This document shows, piece by piece, positions 34,665 to 41,543 of a stretch of 64,000 nt of DNA (position 1 is its first letter; every line of letters starts with the position of its first letter). The notes beneath the pieces were generated by a model. That model worked only from the letters and a program-made list of their open reading frames with translations. It ran no database searches and was not told where the DNA came from. The DNA comes from Adineta vaga (Eukaryota > Animalia > Rotifera). A program made the translations under genes and the position numbers. The stretch spans positions 3,844,001 through 3,908,000 of the forward strand of contig CP075494.1 in the NCBI GenBank assembly GCA_021613535.1. The letters run 5' to 3'.

Positions 34665-35863
34665 TTAGTTTATGTTTTCTTGTCGTCCTCTTGTGTTCGT
34701 CAGATATCCCAAGGTGATTGGACCACGAGTATGAGATTGGGCTGCTTGTGTAGCTATGGATAAATCTCTAACAGTTCTTCGAAATGTTTCATCATTTGTT
34801 ATTGGTTGAATACGATTAGTGTTAATTAATCGTCTACACTTGAATATTGAGCGTAACGCACGAATTAATTCCTTTCGAAATGTGCGCGATGACATAGTAT
34901 ATAAAAAGAATGATGAAGCAGGAAATAAAAGGATCACTACTTCCGCCATGAAGAAAGCAAAACGTTCAATTGATATACGCTCTATTGGTTTATTCGAAAT
35001 ATTCAATGTTGCAGCATTGTAAATATAAAAGACCATGAGAGGTATGACTGAAATAACATAGACAATGACTTGAGTGAAAAGCATAACTAAAGCTTGTTGA
35101 TCTCGTGAGCGATGGATATGATGTGCTTCATCTCTTTCTACTTGTAGATTGATTGTTGGTTGACGACGCTGCCGTTTAAGAGCGAGATTCTGACGAATTA
35201 ACAGGGCACAACCAAACATGATGGACGTTGGCAGAACGCAGGAGGCCATGGTCGCAAAAATACTGTGGTAGAGTGCTGCAGCTATGCCACTAAAAATTCC
35301 ACATGTACTTGCCCTTATATTATAAAAGATAAGAGTATGCACAGGCAGAATAAGCCAAACGATCACTATTACTACTACAACACGACGTGCAATATATACT
35401 CTTGCATAGTTTCGGAAACGTGCATTTGAAGATGAGAGTGCCAATCGATCAATACAAGCTGCAGTCAATGACCAACGATATGTCAAAGCAACAAATTGAT
35501 TTAAGTAGATGCGTAATTTACAAAATGCAAGTATTGTTGTAATTGGATCGATGTTATTTAGTGAATACAAACTTGGTCCAATACCGAATCCCAAATTAGC
35601 TATCATTGCCACGGATGATGCTAAGAAATCTATTAAAACATTAGAAATTCTTATACCGATAAATAGAGTCATGTACGAGAATAAAAAAAACATGAATATA
35701 AAGATGACTTACATGTGCAACAGGATACTGTTCGATAATGTCGTTGAGAGAAGAGAAGAATGTTTAGACAACATCCGACTATGCCAAGTATAAGATATAC
35801 AGAATAAAGATAACGAGTAGTTTCCTGTTGAATAACAAGCAGTGTATTAGCCAACGACGACAT
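34665..35863 (-). CDS. Orphan class A GPCR, copy 2; intron 35712-35630
   Basis: Near-identical to 8623-9806 at an offset of 26057 bp, with a different extreme C-terminus. Confidence 0.88.
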
Positions 35864-37046
35864 GTGTTCAACTGATATTCTATAAAAATTAAACAAGATG
35901 CAAAATTTAATCGGAAATGACTAGTTGATAGTAACTAATTCGAATTAGAAGACAAATACTAAATTTGTCACATTTTAGTAACAGTACTTCGCAGTCATCA
36001 TGCGTATGACATAAATTAGAACACAGTCAGATATGAAAAGCTACCATCGTACATAGTTGATAATGATATGTGATGAGTCTTATATATCTGACCGACAAAA
36101 AAAACTTCAAAAAAGGTTACTCATTTATATGTGCCGAAAGAAAAAGAAACAGAGAGAGAGAGAGAAAGAAGGAGTAAAACGTGAGCAACTTTAAACTCCA
36201 TCTATTTAATAAGCATCAGCACCTCGCTTTGCGTGATTATTATGCGAGAATAAAAAGGAAGAAATAATTTATCATTAACTATCACACTGATACCACTCTC
36301 AGAAAATGTTGTATATTTCAGAGAATTCATAAAAACCGATATCAATTATCTTTAAAACGTACATTGAGATCAAAGATGTATTTTATTCTATTTTAATTCT
36401 CCAATTATTAAAAACCGTTAAAAAGTTAATGAAGTGTTAACAGTTCTGTTAGGAGAAATATGTCTCTAATTAATGTATTTATGATGAGTAATAAAGACAA
36501 ATTGAGGAGATAAATAAGTTTTTCTAGTTGGACGAAGCAATGAATTGCCACAGTGTTTATATGACAATGTTTGACATTCGCGATTTGTCAATATTGTCAT
36601 TAAGTAATTCGAAAATTATCTAAATGTTCATTTCATTTCACGGGTAAATCATGTCAATCTCGTTCTAAGCATTATTAGTTTCAAATATTCATGAAAAATA
36701 TTACATAGAAGCGAAGAAATAATTTGTATGTGAATGCACGTGCCATATTCATCTTCTTTTTCAAGCCTTCGTTTGATGATTATCTTCATTAAGAACAATA
36801 CATTAATTATTTTCTATATAAAGGAATAAACATGGTGTGCGCAAAAGTGACAGTATTGGTATGGGTGTAGACCTTTCTCACTCGTGTTCATTCACCCTCA
36901 AGATGTCCTTGCTTACAGAAATGGCTAAGTAAGTTTCAGATTCGGACATCACTGCGTTGTACTCCTTGCGTAATATTTCCCTAATTGTTTCAATAGTAAT
37001 GAATTATATAAAAACAAATTAAAACAATGATATAAAATGTCAAAGT

Positions 37047-38138
37047 TTACAATAAAGTAGTCAAAAATGTTCCAGGAAGTGATACTTCTAAGAATTGAAG
37101 ATCATTTGATGTGTATGTAAAACGATATGGATGTTTTTCTGGTAGTACAAAGGTATCACCATCATTCAATTTTTCAATCATTTGTCCATCAATTTCAAGA
37201 GAAAGTTGACCAGTCAAAATAAATATAAAAACAAATTCAGCAGTATGTCTACATAGTTGAGATTGTACATGTCCTATAGTGCGGACAATTTTAACTGAAC
37301 CTAAATTTTGTGTTGCTCTAACAATTCCTGTATCTTGATATTCAAAACCAGGTAATCGCCATGATTGCCAATCGTTATTTTCTTGTATTCCATTAAATTT
37401 AATAAAACATTGTCCTTGAAAATCTCGATCAGGTCGTTCTATATCTGTTGGAAGTTGTAGTTGATGATCAATAAAAGTTTCATGTACAGCTGGACACGCA
37501 ACTTCGACTACTTCAAGACCTGGTGAACTTTCTAAAACACGATGCCGTATCAATGGTGGTTGTAAAACACATTGACCAGCATGAAGAATAAACGATGGAC
37601 CTTGATCTTCATAAACAAGATGTACCCAACCTTTATAAACATAAATTATTTGAAAACGTATTTGATGATAATGAACATGATCATTCACAGGTCCACCATC
37701 ATCGATTCGAATATGTGAAGCAATAAAACGGCCACCTTGACGATTTGGAATTAGATCACGATATTTCATTCCAGCACGTCCAATTATCCATTGAGAATCA
37801 TTGGTCATTCGGCTCAAAACAAAGGATTGATGAATTGGTGGAAGTGAAAGTTTTGATGACATTTTAATGAATTGAATTTGTGTTCCATTGGGAGCAACTA
37901 AATCATTATTGATTTCATTCGATTCTTCTTTTAATAATAATTGAAGAATCATAGGTGTTTGTTCATTATGTCGTTCTAATTTTATTCGAATTCCATAACC
38001 AGAAAGAACTACTTCGGATGGATCATCAGCTGGACGAATCATTTCAAGGCGAAATCCAAGTCGATCTTTGAAAAATTGAAGATTTTCATCCAATGATAAA
38101 CATCGAAGAACGATCTGAACTGATTGTATATTTTCCAT
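37047..38138 (-). CDS. Bacterial-type VOC/glyoxalase-like + double cupin protein, intronless
   Basis: N-terminal FFKDRLGFRLEMIRPADDP. Cupin motifs HVHYHQIRFQIIYVYKGWV and GQCVLQPPLIRHRV. Second cupin HTAEFVFIFILTG...GDTFVLP. Confidence 0.85.
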   Translation of the reverse strand: MENIQSVQIVLRCLSLDENLQFFKDRLGFRLEMIRPADDPSEVVLSGYGIRIKLERHNEQTPMILQLLLKEESNEINNDLVAPNGTQIQFIKMSSKLSLPPIHQSFVLSRMTNDSQWIIGRAGMKYRDLIPNRQGGRFIASHIRIDDGGPVNDHVHYHQIRFQIIYVYKGWVHLVYEDQGPSFILHAGQCVLQPPLIRHRVLESSPGLEVVEVACPAVHETFIDHQLQLPTDIERPDRDFQGQCFIKFNGIQENNDWQSWRLPGFEYQDTGIVRATQNLGSVKIVRTIGHVQSQLCRHTAEFVFIFILTGQLSLEIDGQMIEKLNDGDTFVLPEKHPYRFTYTSNDLQFLEVSLPGTFLTTLL

Positions 38139-38183
38139 TAAATATATCTAGAAAAAAAAAGCGAAAATTTTTTTATTTAAATT
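38139..38183 (-). promoter_or_regulatory. Intercistronic spacer: poly(A) signal + polypyrimidine tract + AG acceptor
   Basis: On the minus strand: TAA, then AATAAA (38177-38172), T9-CTAG (AG at 38149-38148), 9 nt, then ATG. Confidence 0.6.
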
Positions 38184-39017
38184 TTAAAAGGATGATGATT
38201 TCCAAATAATTGGAAAGCGTTGATGATCCATTGGAGCACCCGATGGTATTTCATCTCGTAAATCTGAAAAATCTGGCGATGTCATCCATGTTCTAGGTGC
38301 ATGCGTGACATCGTCACCTAGAAAACGAACAGAAAAAACGCGTCGTCGATTTTCATTGCCAATGGTTCCACGAGCACCGTGTAAAGTTAACATATGAAAT
38401 GCAACAACATCTCCTGGTTGAATATCCCATCCAATAATTGGATATGCATCACGATTTTCATCAATATTCGGAATTTCATCAAGAGTTCCTTCAGGAAACC
38501 ATTTTGCTTCCATATTCATAAATGTTCGTGGCATCAACCAACGAGAATGACGATGTGAACCAGGAATAAATTCCAGTGTTGATAAACGTGGCACTGGATC
38601 AACTGGAATCCAGAAACTACAAGTTTGCTGCCCATCAATATTATAATAGGGTTGATCTTGATGCCATGGTGTGATTTGTTGAGTATTTGCTTCTTTAACA
38701 AGTAAATGATCATGATAAAGACGACTAATCGAACTTTTCATTAATAAAGCAGCGACCTGTGCACATGGTGGTTGATAAATAAATTGTTTATAATATGGAT
38801 TTGTTTCCCATGTACAAAAATCCTCGACGAACTTTCCACTATCATCTTCACGACTTGCAATTTTAAATCGTGATGATGGATGAAGAAGATTCTCTTCAAT
38901 ACCTTGACGAATTAATTCAATTTCATCTTGATTTAATAATTGACGAATACATACTGCACCATTTTCTTCATATTCTTTAATAACTGATTCTGTTATCAAT
39001 GACTTCACTCTGTCCAT
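38184..39017 (-). CDS. Phytanoyl-CoA dioxygenase (PhyH) family Fe(II)/2-oxoglutarate dioxygenase, bacterial-type, intronless
   Basis: HDHLLVK, TPWHQD (HxD), WIPVDPV..LEFIPGSH, GDVVAFHMLTLHGA and RRRVFSVRF. Confidence 0.92.
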   Translation of the reverse strand: MDRVKSLITESVIKEYEENGAVCIRQLLNQDEIELIRQGIEENLLHPSSRFKIASREDDSGKFVEDFCTWETNPYYKQFIYQPPCAQVAALLMKSSISRLYHDHLLVKEANTQQITPWHQDQPYYNIDGQQTCSFWIPVDPVPRLSTLEFIPGSHRHSRWLMPRTFMNMEAKWFPEGTLDEIPNIDENRDAYPIIGWDIQPGDVVAFHMLTLHGARGTIGNENRRRVFSVRFLGDDVTHAPRTWMTSPDFSDLRDEIPSGAPMDHQRFPIIWKSSSF

Positions 39018-39319
39018 TTCTTTTCATATATTGAAATAATTTACTTTCATTCTCACTTCTTATCATACTATGTTATCAAAGCTCTTCAAACACATAATTT
39101 ATCTTTTTTGTTCTTCGTAAACGAAGATATGCTACTTGTCCGATTATAATACATTATTAAAATTCAATTTTTGTTTATAAAAGATATGATATGGCGGAAG
39201 CGATAAAAAGTTGATCGTTATGAAATAATCTTGAAGAAAAATAACCAATGTAGTATCATTCATATCTTTCTTTGTTTCTTTCATATCGAAAATGTCCATA
39301 ATATAGTCAATAGTGTAAT

Positions 39320-39660
39320 TGAACTACTTGCAGTAGAATTATGGCGAGAAATACTTGACTATTTCGATATGAATCATTTGGTGGCTTGAATAAACATATC
39401 GATGGAATTATTGATCAAGTACAACTGCATTTAAATTTTGATTATTTTATGAAGAACATTTTATCATCAGTCAATTTCACGAATGTTCGATCATTAAAAT
39501 TATAAAAACAAAACGAAAAGAAACATTTTTTCAATGTATCCTCTCAATTCATTCGTTCAACTTCGATTATTATCATTAGATTATATCAAATATTTATCGA
39601 TTGACTCTTTGTCTTTGACTGATTTGATTAAATTACTCCCTGCATTGCAATGTCATTGAT
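39320..39660 (+). pseudogene. F-box gene remnant
   Basis: Reads IELLAVELWREILDYFD, then GLNKHIDGII after a frameshift; resembles the N-terminus of 54597-56321. Confidence 0.55.
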
Positions 39661-40088
39661 TATCAGTTTTTTGGATTACTCTTCCTGAAGATTTTCGAAT
39701 TGATTTTTGTGACGTTTCGGTGGGCGATGCCCTCTTCGTCAGACTTTATTTTCGAAATTAGAGCGAGTTTTCACACACATATATATATCTTTTTTCTTTT
39801 TCTAGTATATTCTTTTCTTTTCTCATTTTTTCTATATAATAGCGGGTCGGAAGAAGATGATATCATATTAGTCACTTCAACCAGCTATCACCGTCTTGCC
39901 GACCCACTATCATATAGAAAGAATGGGAAAAGAAAAGAATATACTAGAAAAAGAAAAAAGATATATATATGTGTGTGAAAGCTCGTTCTAATTTCGAAAA
40001 TAAAGTCTGACGAAGGGGGCATCGCCCACCGAAACGTCACAAAAATCAATTCGAAAATCTTCAGAAAGAGTAATCCAAAAAACTGATA
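39661..40088. mobile_element. MITE/foldback element with ~200-bp arms and TA at both ends (Tc1/mariner-type target site)
   Basis: tatcagttttttggattactc... is the reverse complement of ...gagtaatccaaaaaactgata. Arms 39661-~39861 and ~39887-40088, loop ~25 nt. Confidence 0.9.
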
Positions 40089-40229
40089 TCCAATACATAC
40101 TAAAACATATTCCTCATGTAAAAGATTTGAATTTCTTTAATGTTATTTTTTTCGTTTTGCATCCTATATTTTCTGAACAAAAAACTAATACAACATCGAA
40201 AGTTTGTTAGTTTATATATGAATAAATTT

Positions 40230-41543
40230 TTATACACGATCATTGTAAATGTCTGCTACATACAAGTTGAATTGCTTATCGATAGTTAACGCACATGGGC
40301 TATTGAATAGGAACGAGCTGCTACCCACAACACCTGTGAAACCAGCAATTGTTGTACCATTCGAGGCATAAGGATGAAAAAGTTGTATACGTAGATTATT
40401 TTCATCTGCCACATATATATTGCCCAGTGAATCTAATTTCACATCTTTAGGACTATTGAGAAGTAACGACGTATTACCACTTATACCGTTGTCGCTACCA
40501 GCTATCAATGTCCAACTACTTGTACCTAAAACCCAACGAACAATATTGTGTGCATTACTATTGGCAATGAGAAGACTATTCGATGATGAGTCATAGAAGA
40601 GTCCTCTAGGACTGTTTAACTGTGTAGTATCCAAGCCATGTCTACTACCACCAGGAATAAGAGTGCCTGATAGAGCACCCACTAAATATTGCATTACACG
40701 TGCATTTCCCGAATCCCATACGTAAAGCGTACCCGTACTTGAATCAAGCGCTATACCCATTATTTGATTAAGTTGATCATTGGTCGATCCGCCTGTACCT
40801 GCAAATATGAACAGTGACACGTTTACAATACACATAAAAACAACTTTCTTTATTCATATTTGTTACCATTGCCTGAAATGCGTATGCCTGAAGATGAACC
40901 ATTACTCCAATAGACGATTCGATTATTCCAAGCATCTGCGACATAGACGCCTGCATTGGAATCAACAACAATTTGAAAAGGACCATACAAAGCTGATAAA
41001 TCATTGCCTGCCATACCATCTGATCGCCCTGCCACTGTGGTACCATTTGAAGCATTTCGCAACCATTTTTGAGCGCGATTATTAGCAAAATCACTAATGT
41101 AGATCGAATCTAATGGTCCCAATGCAACAGATATTGGCATATTGAGCTGTCCGGCAGCTACACCCACACCCACCCATGATTCCAGCCACTGTGATACCTG
41201 TTGTATTCCAACTGTATGAGAAGTTACTCACTACAATAAGTAATAAAATATTCATTAGGAATGTGAGTGCATAAAGTGAATGTTGAATTTTACTGACCTG
41301 CAGAAATTTTATTTGGAAAAGTAAGAACGCTTGATTGGTGCCGGAATAGGTGGCTGTAATGCAACTTGAATTGATAAAACATTCACAGGCACAATCAGCC
41401 CATGAACTGACATTGACTAGATCATATACGATCGAATTTGCATCACTTGAAACGAACTGAACATTAGGATAAAAGATGATTGCAACTCTTGCAGACGATA
41501 AATGATATATGACAAAGTAAAGCATGTTTTGTATCAACATCAT
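40230..41543 (-). pseudogene. PAN/Apple + NHL-repeat beta-propeller gene, disrupted
   Basis: CACECF...C..ATY Apple-like domain, WNTTGITVAG and NHL repeats (YISDFANNR, YVADENNLRIQ). Frameshift near 41175, and TAA in DRV*KF where Q is expected. Confidence 0.72.

What the first reader, a model, noticed from the sequence alone, without database searches (positions are those of the whole stretch)
37047..39017. Bacterial-type two-gene operon possibly domesticated by poly(A)/trans-splice signals in a 45-bp spacer
Seen: intronless PhyH dioxygenase and VOC/double-cupin genes are co-oriented 45 bp apart. The spacer reads TAA-aattta-AATAAA-aaattttcgc-T9-C-TAG-9 nt-ATG, has no GT donor, and leaves no room for a promoter. 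Known: bdelloids perform spliced-leader trans-splicing, and nematode SL1-type operons put the upstream 3'-end signal directly against a pyrimidine tract and trans-splice AG. Inference: a co-transferred bacterial operon is expressed as a eukaryotic polycistron and encodes an uncharacterised two-metalloenzyme pathway. This would be a route for whole operons to become functional after HGT.
Basis: partly seen in the sequence, partly recalled or inferred. Interest (0 to 1): 0.82.

Follow-up and report, generated by a model that had tools for sequence, protein, structure and literature searches.

The report
Foreign-gene pair packed like a rotifer operon
Two bacterial-type enzyme genes in a bdelloid rotifer sit 45 bases apart and give two separate messages whose ends almost touch, which looks like a small spliced-leader operon, but nothing supports the idea that they arrived together as a bacterial operon.

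Summary
On the minus strand, an intronless PhyH dioxygenase gene (38184-39017) is followed after 45 nt by an intronless VOC-like/bicupin gene (37047-38138). The spacer reads TAA, 6 nt, AATAAA, 10 nt, T9, C, TAG, 9 nt, ATG and has no GT.

The genome is Adineta vaga-like: 100.8 Mb in 6 contigs, with 59 spliced-leader (SL) gene copies.

Both genes are old bacterial-type acquisitions. Each forms one bdelloid clade that includes Didymodactylos, and both are under purifying selection with host-like codon composition.

RNA-like contigs from three studies cover only the two genes. The PhyH message ends 10 nt after AATAAA. The cupin message starts at the TAG. The 13 nt between them are never covered. 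The pyrimidine-tract/TAG/ATA acceptor is kept in A. ricciae (27-nt spacer) and in A. steineri, where the genes are unlinked.

This fits a poly(A)/SL-resolved dicistron of the Ciona or C. elegans SL1 type. However, neither the SL, a poly(A) tail, nor a dicistronic precursor was seen.

The "co-transferred bacterial operon" part is not supported. None of 160 bacterial or metagenomic loci has the co-oriented pair, the nearest bacterial relatives differ, and most bdelloid lineages have the genes unlinked.

This scan had already noted several SL-operon candidates elsewhere in this genome.

The parts
38184..39017 (-). PhyH-family Fe(II)/2-oxoglutarate dioxygenase gene, intronless, 277 aa; upstream cistron
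   Evidence: ORF. Pfam PF05721, 89 bits. The HxD...H iron triad aligns with the solved MysH structure. dN/dS is 0.07 against A. ricciae. RNA contigs cover it in 4 runs.
39018..39042 (-). Minimum 5' UTR of the PhyH message. The sequence is purine-rich with no acceptor-like tract, so this gene probably has its own transcription start, with about 1.2 kb of intergenic DNA upstream.
   Evidence: The X2 contig reaches 39042. Sequence read. The next ORF upstream ends at 40230.
38172..38177 (-). AATAAA poly(A) signal of PhyH, starting 7 nt after its stop codon
   Evidence: The X10 PhyH contig ends at 38162, 10 nt downstream. AATAAA close to the stop is also present in the L014 and Rotaria orthologues.
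38151..38161 (-). CT9C pyrimidine tract. It is the only part of the unit never covered by RNA contigs. Inferred to be the polypyrimidine tract of the acceptor and perhaps a U-rich downstream element for 3'-end formation.
   Evidence: Positions 38149-38161 are uncovered in all four runs. Coordinates.
38148..38150 (-). TAG: candidate (trans-)splice acceptor; the exon would begin at 38147
   Evidence: The X10 cupin contig ends at 38148 and the X1 contig at 38143. T-tract+TAG+ATA is conserved in A. ricciae and A. steineri upstream of the same ATG.
38139..38147 (-). 9-nt 5' UTR of the cupin message
37047..38138 (-). Three-domain gene (VOC-like N-terminal domain plus bicupin), intronless, 363 aa; downstream cistron
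   Evidence: ORF. Two Cupin_2 hits. Glyoxalase hits in 11 of 17 relatives. AlphaFold model has pLDDT 86 and its best fold matches are quercetin 2,3-dioxygenase and oxalate decarboxylase bicupins. dN/dS is 0.20.
36968..37046 (-). 3' UTR of the cupin message (about 79 nt, no canonical AATAAA)
   Evidence: The X10 contig spans 36968-38148. Sequence read.

Best explanation
Two bacterial-type genes were acquired before the bdelloid radiation: a PhyH Fe(II)/2OG dioxygenase and a VOC-like/bicupin protein of unknown substrate. In the A. vaga/A. ricciae lineage they lie head to tail, 45 nt and 27 nt apart. They are expressed as two separate mature mRNAs. The PhyH mRNA is cleaved about 10 nt after the AATAAA in the spacer. 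The cupin mRNA begins at a conserved pyrimidine-tract/AG acceptor 9 nt before its ATG. The most likely mechanism is that RNA polymerase II starts upstream of PhyH and reads through both genes. The downstream cistron then gets its capped 5' end by spliced-leader trans-splicing at 38147, as in Ciona operons and C. elegans SL1-type operons. Shown here: the anatomy, expression of both genes, the positions of the RNA ends, the conservation of the acceptor, SL genes in the genome, and the foreign origin of both genes. Inferred: SL addition at this site, polyadenylation, and co-transcription. The tight packing is best seen as an arrangement made or kept by the rotifer, not as an inherited bacterial operon.
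For: Anatomy. Four runs from three studies cover only the two genes and nothing in the flanks, so they behave as RNA. X10 has one contig at 36968-38148 and another at 38162-39015. No run covers 38149-38161, and no joints were reported at the spacer. The genome holds 59 copies of the 22-nt SL sequence against 0 in the reversed control, each followed by a GTAAAT donor. The acceptor motif is conserved although synonymous sites are near saturation (dS 0.65-1.0): A. ricciae has TGTTTTGTAG|ATAAA-ATG and A. steineri has TTTTAATTGTAG|ATAT...ATG. PhyH itself has no acceptor-like tract and has 1.2 kb of upstream DNA. The literature describes the same junction anatomy for Ciona and SL1-type operons (PMC1488885). 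More than 50% of bdelloid mRNAs carry the SL (PMC1925144 citing Pouchkina-Stantcheva 2005). Foreign origin: each gene forms a single bdelloid clade (support 97-100) among bacterial sequences.
Against: No SL letters, no poly(A) tail and no contig bridging the spacer were seen in any of the four runs. Only assembled contigs were available, and contigs cannot prove ends. A TAAATAAA at -31 of the observed 5' end could act as a TATA box. Operons have not been reported for rotifers (PMC7986045). The genes work unlinked in most other bdelloids, so co-transcription is not required for their function.
Confidence: 0.5

Rival explanations
1. Two independent, very compact transcription units. The cupin gene has its own promoter inside the 3' part of PhyH and the spacer. 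Either a capped start lies near 38148 (TATA-like TAAATAAA at -31), or a short outron is then SL trans-spliced. The genes are neighbours but are not co-transcribed.
For: TAAATAAA (38179-38172) sits 31 nt upstream of the contig end at 38148. No dicistronic contig was found in 4 runs. Contig depths of the two genes differ up to about 3-fold in some runs (a weak measure). The cupin gene is expressed from its own upstream region in species where it is unlinked.
Against: The TATA-like element is not kept at that distance in A. ricciae, whereas the acceptor is. A/T-rich octamers are everywhere in a 30% GC genome. The A. ricciae spacer is only 27 nt. The 5' end coincides with an AG preceded by 11 pyrimidines.
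Confidence: 0.3
2. One reading: both genes came in on one DNA fragment as a bacterial operon and were then fitted with poly(A) and trans-splice signals.
For: Both genes are bacterial-type, and each forms a single bdelloid clade that includes Didymodactylos. The order and orientation PhyH>cupin is shared by A. vaga, A. ricciae and a divergent bdelloid-like metagenome contig with a 523-nt spacer (L014), so the linkage is old. Of 50 cupin-bearing bacterial genomes, 23 also hold a PhyH relative, 6 of them at 52% identity or more. One genome has the two genes as convergent neighbours (L026).
Against: None of 80 bacterial cupin loci (+-10 kb) has a co-oriented adjacent PhyH. None of 80 PhyH loci has a cupin gene; 61 of them have at least 1.5 kb downstream. 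Legionella PhyH loci, and two loci of close bacterial/metagenomic cupin relatives, lack the partner gene. The nearest bacterial PhyH relatives are Legionellales-like (62-65% identity). The nearest cupin relatives are a mix of Acidobacteriota, Alphaproteobacteria, Actinomycetota and Polyangia (50-53%). The genes are unlinked in Rotaria, Didymodactylos, A. steineri, L185 and L187, with no pseudogene remnant of the partner.
Confidence: 0.12
3. The AG at 38148-38149 is a cis-splice acceptor. The cupin mRNA would then carry a short non-coding first exon located inside or upstream of PhyH.
For: The acceptor motif is conserved. Contigs stop at the AG.
Against: No joint to 38147 appears in any of four runs, and no loose end at 38148. 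The spacer has no GT. An assembled contig would normally carry a cis-spliced leader exon.
Confidence: 0.05

Closest known systems
Ciona intestinalis operons without intercistronic DNA, and C. elegans SL1-type operons (PMC1488885)
   Same: Same-strand genes. The upstream 3'-end signal (AATAAA, as in SL1-type operons) lies directly against the pyrimidine tract and AG of the downstream gene. One SL serves both monocistronic and operonic genes. The first cistron is not necessarily trans-spliced.
   Different: Here up to 13 nt may remain between the two mature RNAs. SL addition and the dicistronic precursor are not shown. The phylum has no published operons (PMC7986045). Both cistrons are of bacterial origin.
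Horizontal operon transfer of the enterobactin (ent) operon into Wickerhamiella/Starmerella yeasts (bioRxiv 10.1101/399394)
   Same: Clustered, co-oriented bacterial-type genes are expressed in a eukaryote after gaining poly(A) sites.
   Different: In the yeasts the donor operon is known and synteny with bacteria is clear, and no trans-splicing was found. Here bacterial synteny is absent and the donors look different, so en bloc transfer is not supported.
Bdelloid foreign genes in general (Gladyshev 2008; Flot 2013, as cited), and the proposal that SL trans-splicing eases expression of transferred genes (PMC6053224)
   Same: Intronless bacterial-type enzymes with host-like base composition, expressed, and kept across bdelloid families.
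   Different: What is unusual is the pair's operon-like packing, not its foreign origin.
MysH, an Fe/2OG dioxygenase of mycosporine-like amino acid biosynthesis (PDB 9pze, 9c9n), and bicupin dioxygenases/decarboxylases (quercetinase YxaG, OxdC)
   Same: PhyH aligns end to end with MysH and keeps the HxD...H triad (E 1e-24). The cupin model matches the bicupin fold.
   Different: Sequence identity is low. NCBIfam hits are far below their cut-offs. The extra VOC-like N-terminal domain has no counterpart in the matched bicupins. Substrates are unknown.

Membership tests
SL-resolved eukaryotic operon (Ciona / SL1 type) | Same-strand genes separated by under about 100 nt | tested here: met
   45 nt in the window and 27 nt in A. 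ricciae.
SL-resolved eukaryotic operon (Ciona / SL1 type) | The organism has SL RNA genes with a splice donor | tested here: met
   59 copies of the SL sequence against 0 in the control, each followed by GTAAAT.
SL-resolved eukaryotic operon (Ciona / SL1 type) | The downstream mRNA carries the SL joined at the acceptor | tested here: inconclusive
   RNA contigs end at 38148 and 38143, at the conserved acceptor, but carry no SL letters. Only contigs could be laid, not raw reads.
SL-resolved eukaryotic operon (Ciona / SL1 type) | The upstream mRNA is polyadenylated just before the acceptor | tested here: inconclusive
   The PhyH contig ends at 38162, 10 nt after AATAAA. No A-tail is visible in the contigs.
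SL-resolved eukaryotic operon (Ciona / SL1 type) | A polycistronic precursor exists | tested here: inconclusive
   No contig bridges 38149-38161 in four runs. Contigs drop rare forms, so absence is not shown.
Horizontally transferred bacterial operon | Both genes are of bacterial origin | tested here: met
   The only named eukaryotic hits in the top 120 are bdelloids. The bdelloid clades have support 97-100 among bacterial sequences.
Horizontally transferred bacterial operon | The genes are adjacent and co-oriented in bacteria | tested here: not met
   0 of 80 cupin-anchored loci and 0 of 80 PhyH-anchored loci have the co-oriented pair. One is a convergent pair and one has the genes 8.5 kb apart.
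Horizontally transferred bacterial operon | Both genes have the same donor lineage | tested here: inconclusive
   The nearest named relatives differ: Legionellales-like for PhyH, mixed phyla for the cupin. The sister groups are unresolved. A sample of 401 genomes of one class gave no PhyH hit and was uninformative.
Horizontally transferred bacterial operon | The linkage is kept across the recipient clade | tested here: inconclusive
   Linked in A. vaga, A. ricciae and L014. Unlinked in Rotaria, Didymodactylos, A. steineri, L185 and L187.
PhyH (PF05721) Fe(II)/2OG dioxygenases | Profile match above the curated cut-off and an intact HxD...H triad | tested here: met
   89 bits against a cut-off of 22. 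WHQD and the distal His align with those of MysH.
Bicupin metalloproteins | Two cupin barrels, with conserved His ligands in at least one | tested here: met
   Two Cupin_2 stretches. H156, H158 and H199 are invariant in 17 sequences. The fold matches quercetinase and OxdC.

The most novel reading that the evidence does not exclude
A bacterial two-gene unit entered the bdelloid ancestor on one fragment. It has been kept as a polycistron ever since in the Adineta vaga/ricciae line, with a poly(A) signal and an SL trans-splice acceptor inserted between the cistrons. This would be a route by which whole operons become functional in an animal. The two metalloenzymes would act in one still-unknown oxidative pathway.
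Probability: 0.1. Interest if true: 0.85.

Novelty: new member of a known kind. Interest (0 to 1): 0.45.

Why it matters
If co-transcription and SL addition are confirmed, this would be an animal operon built from two genes of bacterial origin. It would lie in a phylum for which the searchable literature reports trans-splicing but no operons. That would show that SL trans-splicing lets a foreign gene be expressed without a promoter of its own, an idea so far only proposed (PMC6053224). The stronger claim, that a bacterial operon was transferred whole, would matter more but is not supported here. As it stands, the finding is one more candidate in a set of SL-operon candidates that this scan has already noted in the same genome. 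Its distinguishing feature is its foreign gene content.

Tried and rejected
1. Direct SL evidence. Only one read-laying run was allowed and all four runs were assembled contigs. No SL or poly(A) letters appeared, so the key test stayed open.

2. The 'joint' 39596>37003 reported by the read tool. It comes from two 18-nt AT-rich exact matches to exons of an unrelated, highly expressed bHLH-like gene on another chromosome (C4:873 kb), with an intron between them. I take it for chance, not a rearrangement or circle junction.

3. Bdelloid contigs from the metagenome scan. It returned only bacterial-type PhyH loci, which I used as a synteny test instead.

4. Testing whether Legionellales carry the cupin. 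A sample of 401 genomes of one class gave no PhyH hit at all, so it was uninformative.

5. Hidden paralogy as an explanation for the patchy linkage. Adineta monophyly in the PhyH tree is not rejected (p-AU 0.25), so paralogy is not needed, but the linkage history remains unresolved.

6. Pseudogene remnants of the partner gene at unlinked loci. None were found even at E up to 5.

7. Alignment of non-coding flanks between species. There is no homology outside the coding regions.

8. Function from curated families. NCBIfam hits are far below their cut-offs.

Full report
**What is there**

Both genes lie on the minus strand.
- The upstream ORF (38184-39017, 277 aa) is a PhyH-family protein (PF05721, E 6e-25).
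- The downstream ORF (37047-38138, 363 aa) has two Cupin_2 hits.
- 11 of 17 relatives of the downstream protein also give a weak Glyoxalase/VOC hit in the N-terminal ~100 residues.
- An AlphaFold model of the downstream protein (pLDDT 86) matches bicupin enzymes such as quercetin 2,3-dioxygenase and oxalate decarboxylase.
- The PhyH protein aligns end to end with the solved Fe/2OG dioxygenase MysH and keeps the HxD...H triad.
- NCBIfam gives no hit near a cut-off, so both substrates are unknown.

- stop TAA, then 6 nt
- AATAAA (38177-38172), then 10 nt
- CT9C (38161-38151)
- TAG (38150-38148), then 9 nt
- ATG (38138)

Simple motif counts in the window give 0.005 (T7+...AG), 0.04 (nine pyrimidines + AG) and 0.10 (AATAAA) expected occurrences per 45 nt.

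**Whose genome**

The window is part of a 100.8-Mb assembly in six contigs with about 30% GC. The closest named proteins are from Adineta ricciae (87% and 77% identity), followed by A. steineri, Rotaria and Didymodactylos. This is a bdelloid rotifer, most likely Adineta vaga.

It matched 59 places at 1 or 2 mismatches; 42 of them differ only at the first base. The reversed control gave none. The matches are often in divergent pairs, and in the copies I read the sequence is followed by a GTAAAT donor.

**Foreign origin**

In the top 120 hits of each protein, the only named eukaryotes are bdelloids. Everything else that is named is bacterial.
- Each family forms a single bdelloid clade: PhyH has 22 rows (SH-aLRT 97; 98/89 in the careful tree), and the cupin has 28 rows (support 100).
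- Both clades include Didymodactylos.
- Against A. ricciae, dN/dS is 0.07 and 0.20, with dS 0.65-1.0. GC3 is 12-17%.

These are old, ameliorated, functional acquisitions. The pair is single-copy in the haploid assembly.

**Expression**

Only one read-laying run was allowed, and all the runs held assembled contigs. I laid four runs from three studies on 36300-40300.

All four cover the two genes. They leave the flanks (36300-36700, 39114-39480, 39660-40300) at zero depth, apart from spurious AT-rich matches to unrelated transcripts. They therefore behave as RNA.
- In run X10, one contig spans 36968-38148. It holds the whole cupin CDS, 79 nt of 3' UTR, and a 5' end at the G of the TAG.
- A second X10 contig spans 38162-39015. 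It holds PhyH and ends 10 nt after AATAAA.
- In X1 the cupin contig ends at 38143.
- In X2 the PhyH contig reaches 39042.
- No run covers 38149-38161.
- There are no joints at the spacer and no loose ends there.

So the mature RNAs are separate, and their ends lie within 13 nt of each other inside the spacer. No SL letters, no A-tail and no bridging contig were seen. Contigs cannot prove ends and they drop rare forms, so SL addition and a precursor are neither shown nor excluded.

**Comparative evidence for the acceptor**

- In A. ricciae the genes are adjacent with a 27-nt spacer. It has lost AATAAA (an AATATA overlaps the stop) but keeps TGTTTTGTAG|ATAAA-ATG.
- In A. steineri the cupin gene has no PhyH within 4 kb, yet TTTTAATTGTAG|ATAT lies 22 nt before the same ATG.

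Synonymous sites are close to saturation between A. vaga and A. ricciae, and non-coding flanks no longer align between any of the species compared. Retention of T-tract+TAG+ATA therefore argues for a functional acceptor that predates the tight packing.

PhyH itself is preceded by purine-rich sequence and about 1.2 kb of intergenic DNA, as expected of a first cistron with its own start.

**Mechanism**

The junction has the anatomy described for Ciona operons and C. elegans SL1-type operons. There, the upstream 3'-end signal abuts the trans-splice acceptor of the next gene (PMC1488885).

A functional acceptor 9 nt before the ATG needs a pre-mRNA that starts upstream of it. The spacer is only 27-45 nt and also holds the PhyH 3'-end site, so that start must lie in or upstream of PhyH.

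I put co-transcription from the PhyH promoter at about 0.5. An internal or spacer promoter gets about 0.3. One version of that rival uses TAAATAAA at -31 of the observed 5' end as a TATA box, although it is not conserved at that distance in A. ricciae. A cis-spliced leader exon is unlikely, because no joint was seen.

**Origin of the pair**

- Of 80 bacterial loci anchored on the cupin gene with up to 10 kb on each side, three hold any PhyH hit: a 41%-identity convergent neighbour (L026), a 52% relative 8.5 kb away (L043), and a distant paralogue.
- Of 80 metagenomic loci anchored on close bacterial PhyH relatives, none holds a cupin gene. 61 of them have at least 1.5 kb downstream.
- Legionella PhyH loci, and the loci of two close cupin relatives, show unrelated neighbours.
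- The nearest bacterial PhyH sequences are Legionellales-like at 62-65% identity. The nearest cupins come from Acidobacteriota, Alphaproteobacteria, Actinomycetota, Polyangia and others at 50-53%.
- 23 of 50 cupin-bearing genomes hold a PhyH relative, six at 52% identity or more. All of these are unlinked except L026 (41%) and L043 (52%) noted above.

Within bdelloids the PhyH>cupin order is shared by A. vaga (45 nt), A. ricciae (27 nt) and a divergent bdelloid-like contig, L014 (523 nt). The linkage is therefore old. But it is absent, without pseudogene remnants, in Rotaria, Didymodactylos, A. steineri, L185 and L187.

The PhyH tree does not reject Adineta monophyly (p-AU 0.25). The history of the linkage cannot be resolved. 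En bloc transfer remains possible at roughly 0.1.

**Literature and earlier notes**

A 2021 methods paper states that operons have not been reported in rotifers (PMC7986045). My searches found no later report for Adineta.

The yeast ent cluster is the documented case of horizontal operon transfer. There, trans-splicing was looked for and not found (bioRxiv 10.1101/399394). The idea that SL trans-splicing could ease expression of transferred genes has been proposed, with rotifers named as an example (PMC6053224).

This scan's own notes list several SL-operon candidates elsewhere in this genome. Some report SL-joined reads and the same 'one message ends where the next begins' pattern. I did not test those. 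They raise the prior but are not independent evidence.

**Verdict**

- The evolutionary half (a co-transferred bacterial operon) and the 'two-enzyme pathway' are not supported.

The finding is best described as a candidate two-gene SL-type operon made of old foreign genes, awaiting raw-read or RACE confirmation.

Noticed in passing
G000 C5:9.88-9.93 Mb and 10.91-10.93 Mb, C2:8.68-8.69 Mb; loci L179-L184: SL RNA genes occur in clusters. They are often head-to-head pairs with SL starts about 154 nt apart, and some variant copies have one internal mismatch.
   Followed up: partly
window 37003-37020 and 39579-39596; L188 (G000 C4:872251-875280): The read tool reported a 'joint' between these two places. 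It comes from two 18-nt AT-rich exact matches to neighbouring exons of an unrelated, highly expressed bHLH-like gene on another chromosome. I take it for chance, although two such matches bracketing the gene pair are curious.
   Followed up: yes
L026 (uncultured bacterium MAG, contig CAYYXU010000029.1) 916-2944: This is the only bacterial locus of 160 in which a PhyH relative (41% identity) directly neighbours the cupin gene. The two are convergent, 149 nt apart.
   Followed up: no
L187 5001-9396 (bdelloid-like metagenome contig): Here the PhyH orthologue is followed after 200 nt by a co-oriented 1127-aa zf-MYND/DUF4470 gene. This is a different tight downstream partner.
   Followed up: no
window 38184-39017: The closest solved relative of the rotifer PhyH is MysH, the dioxygenase that makes palythine-type mycosporine-like amino acids (sunscreen compounds). 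This is a lead for substrate tests only.
   Followed up: partly
window 34665-35896 and 40230-41543, minus strand: The flanking genes on the same strand are a 7-TM receptor-like ORF and an NHL-repeat gene in several exons, each more than 1 kb from the pair. No RNA contigs were seen over the first 70 nt of the NHL gene in the four runs.
   Followed up: no
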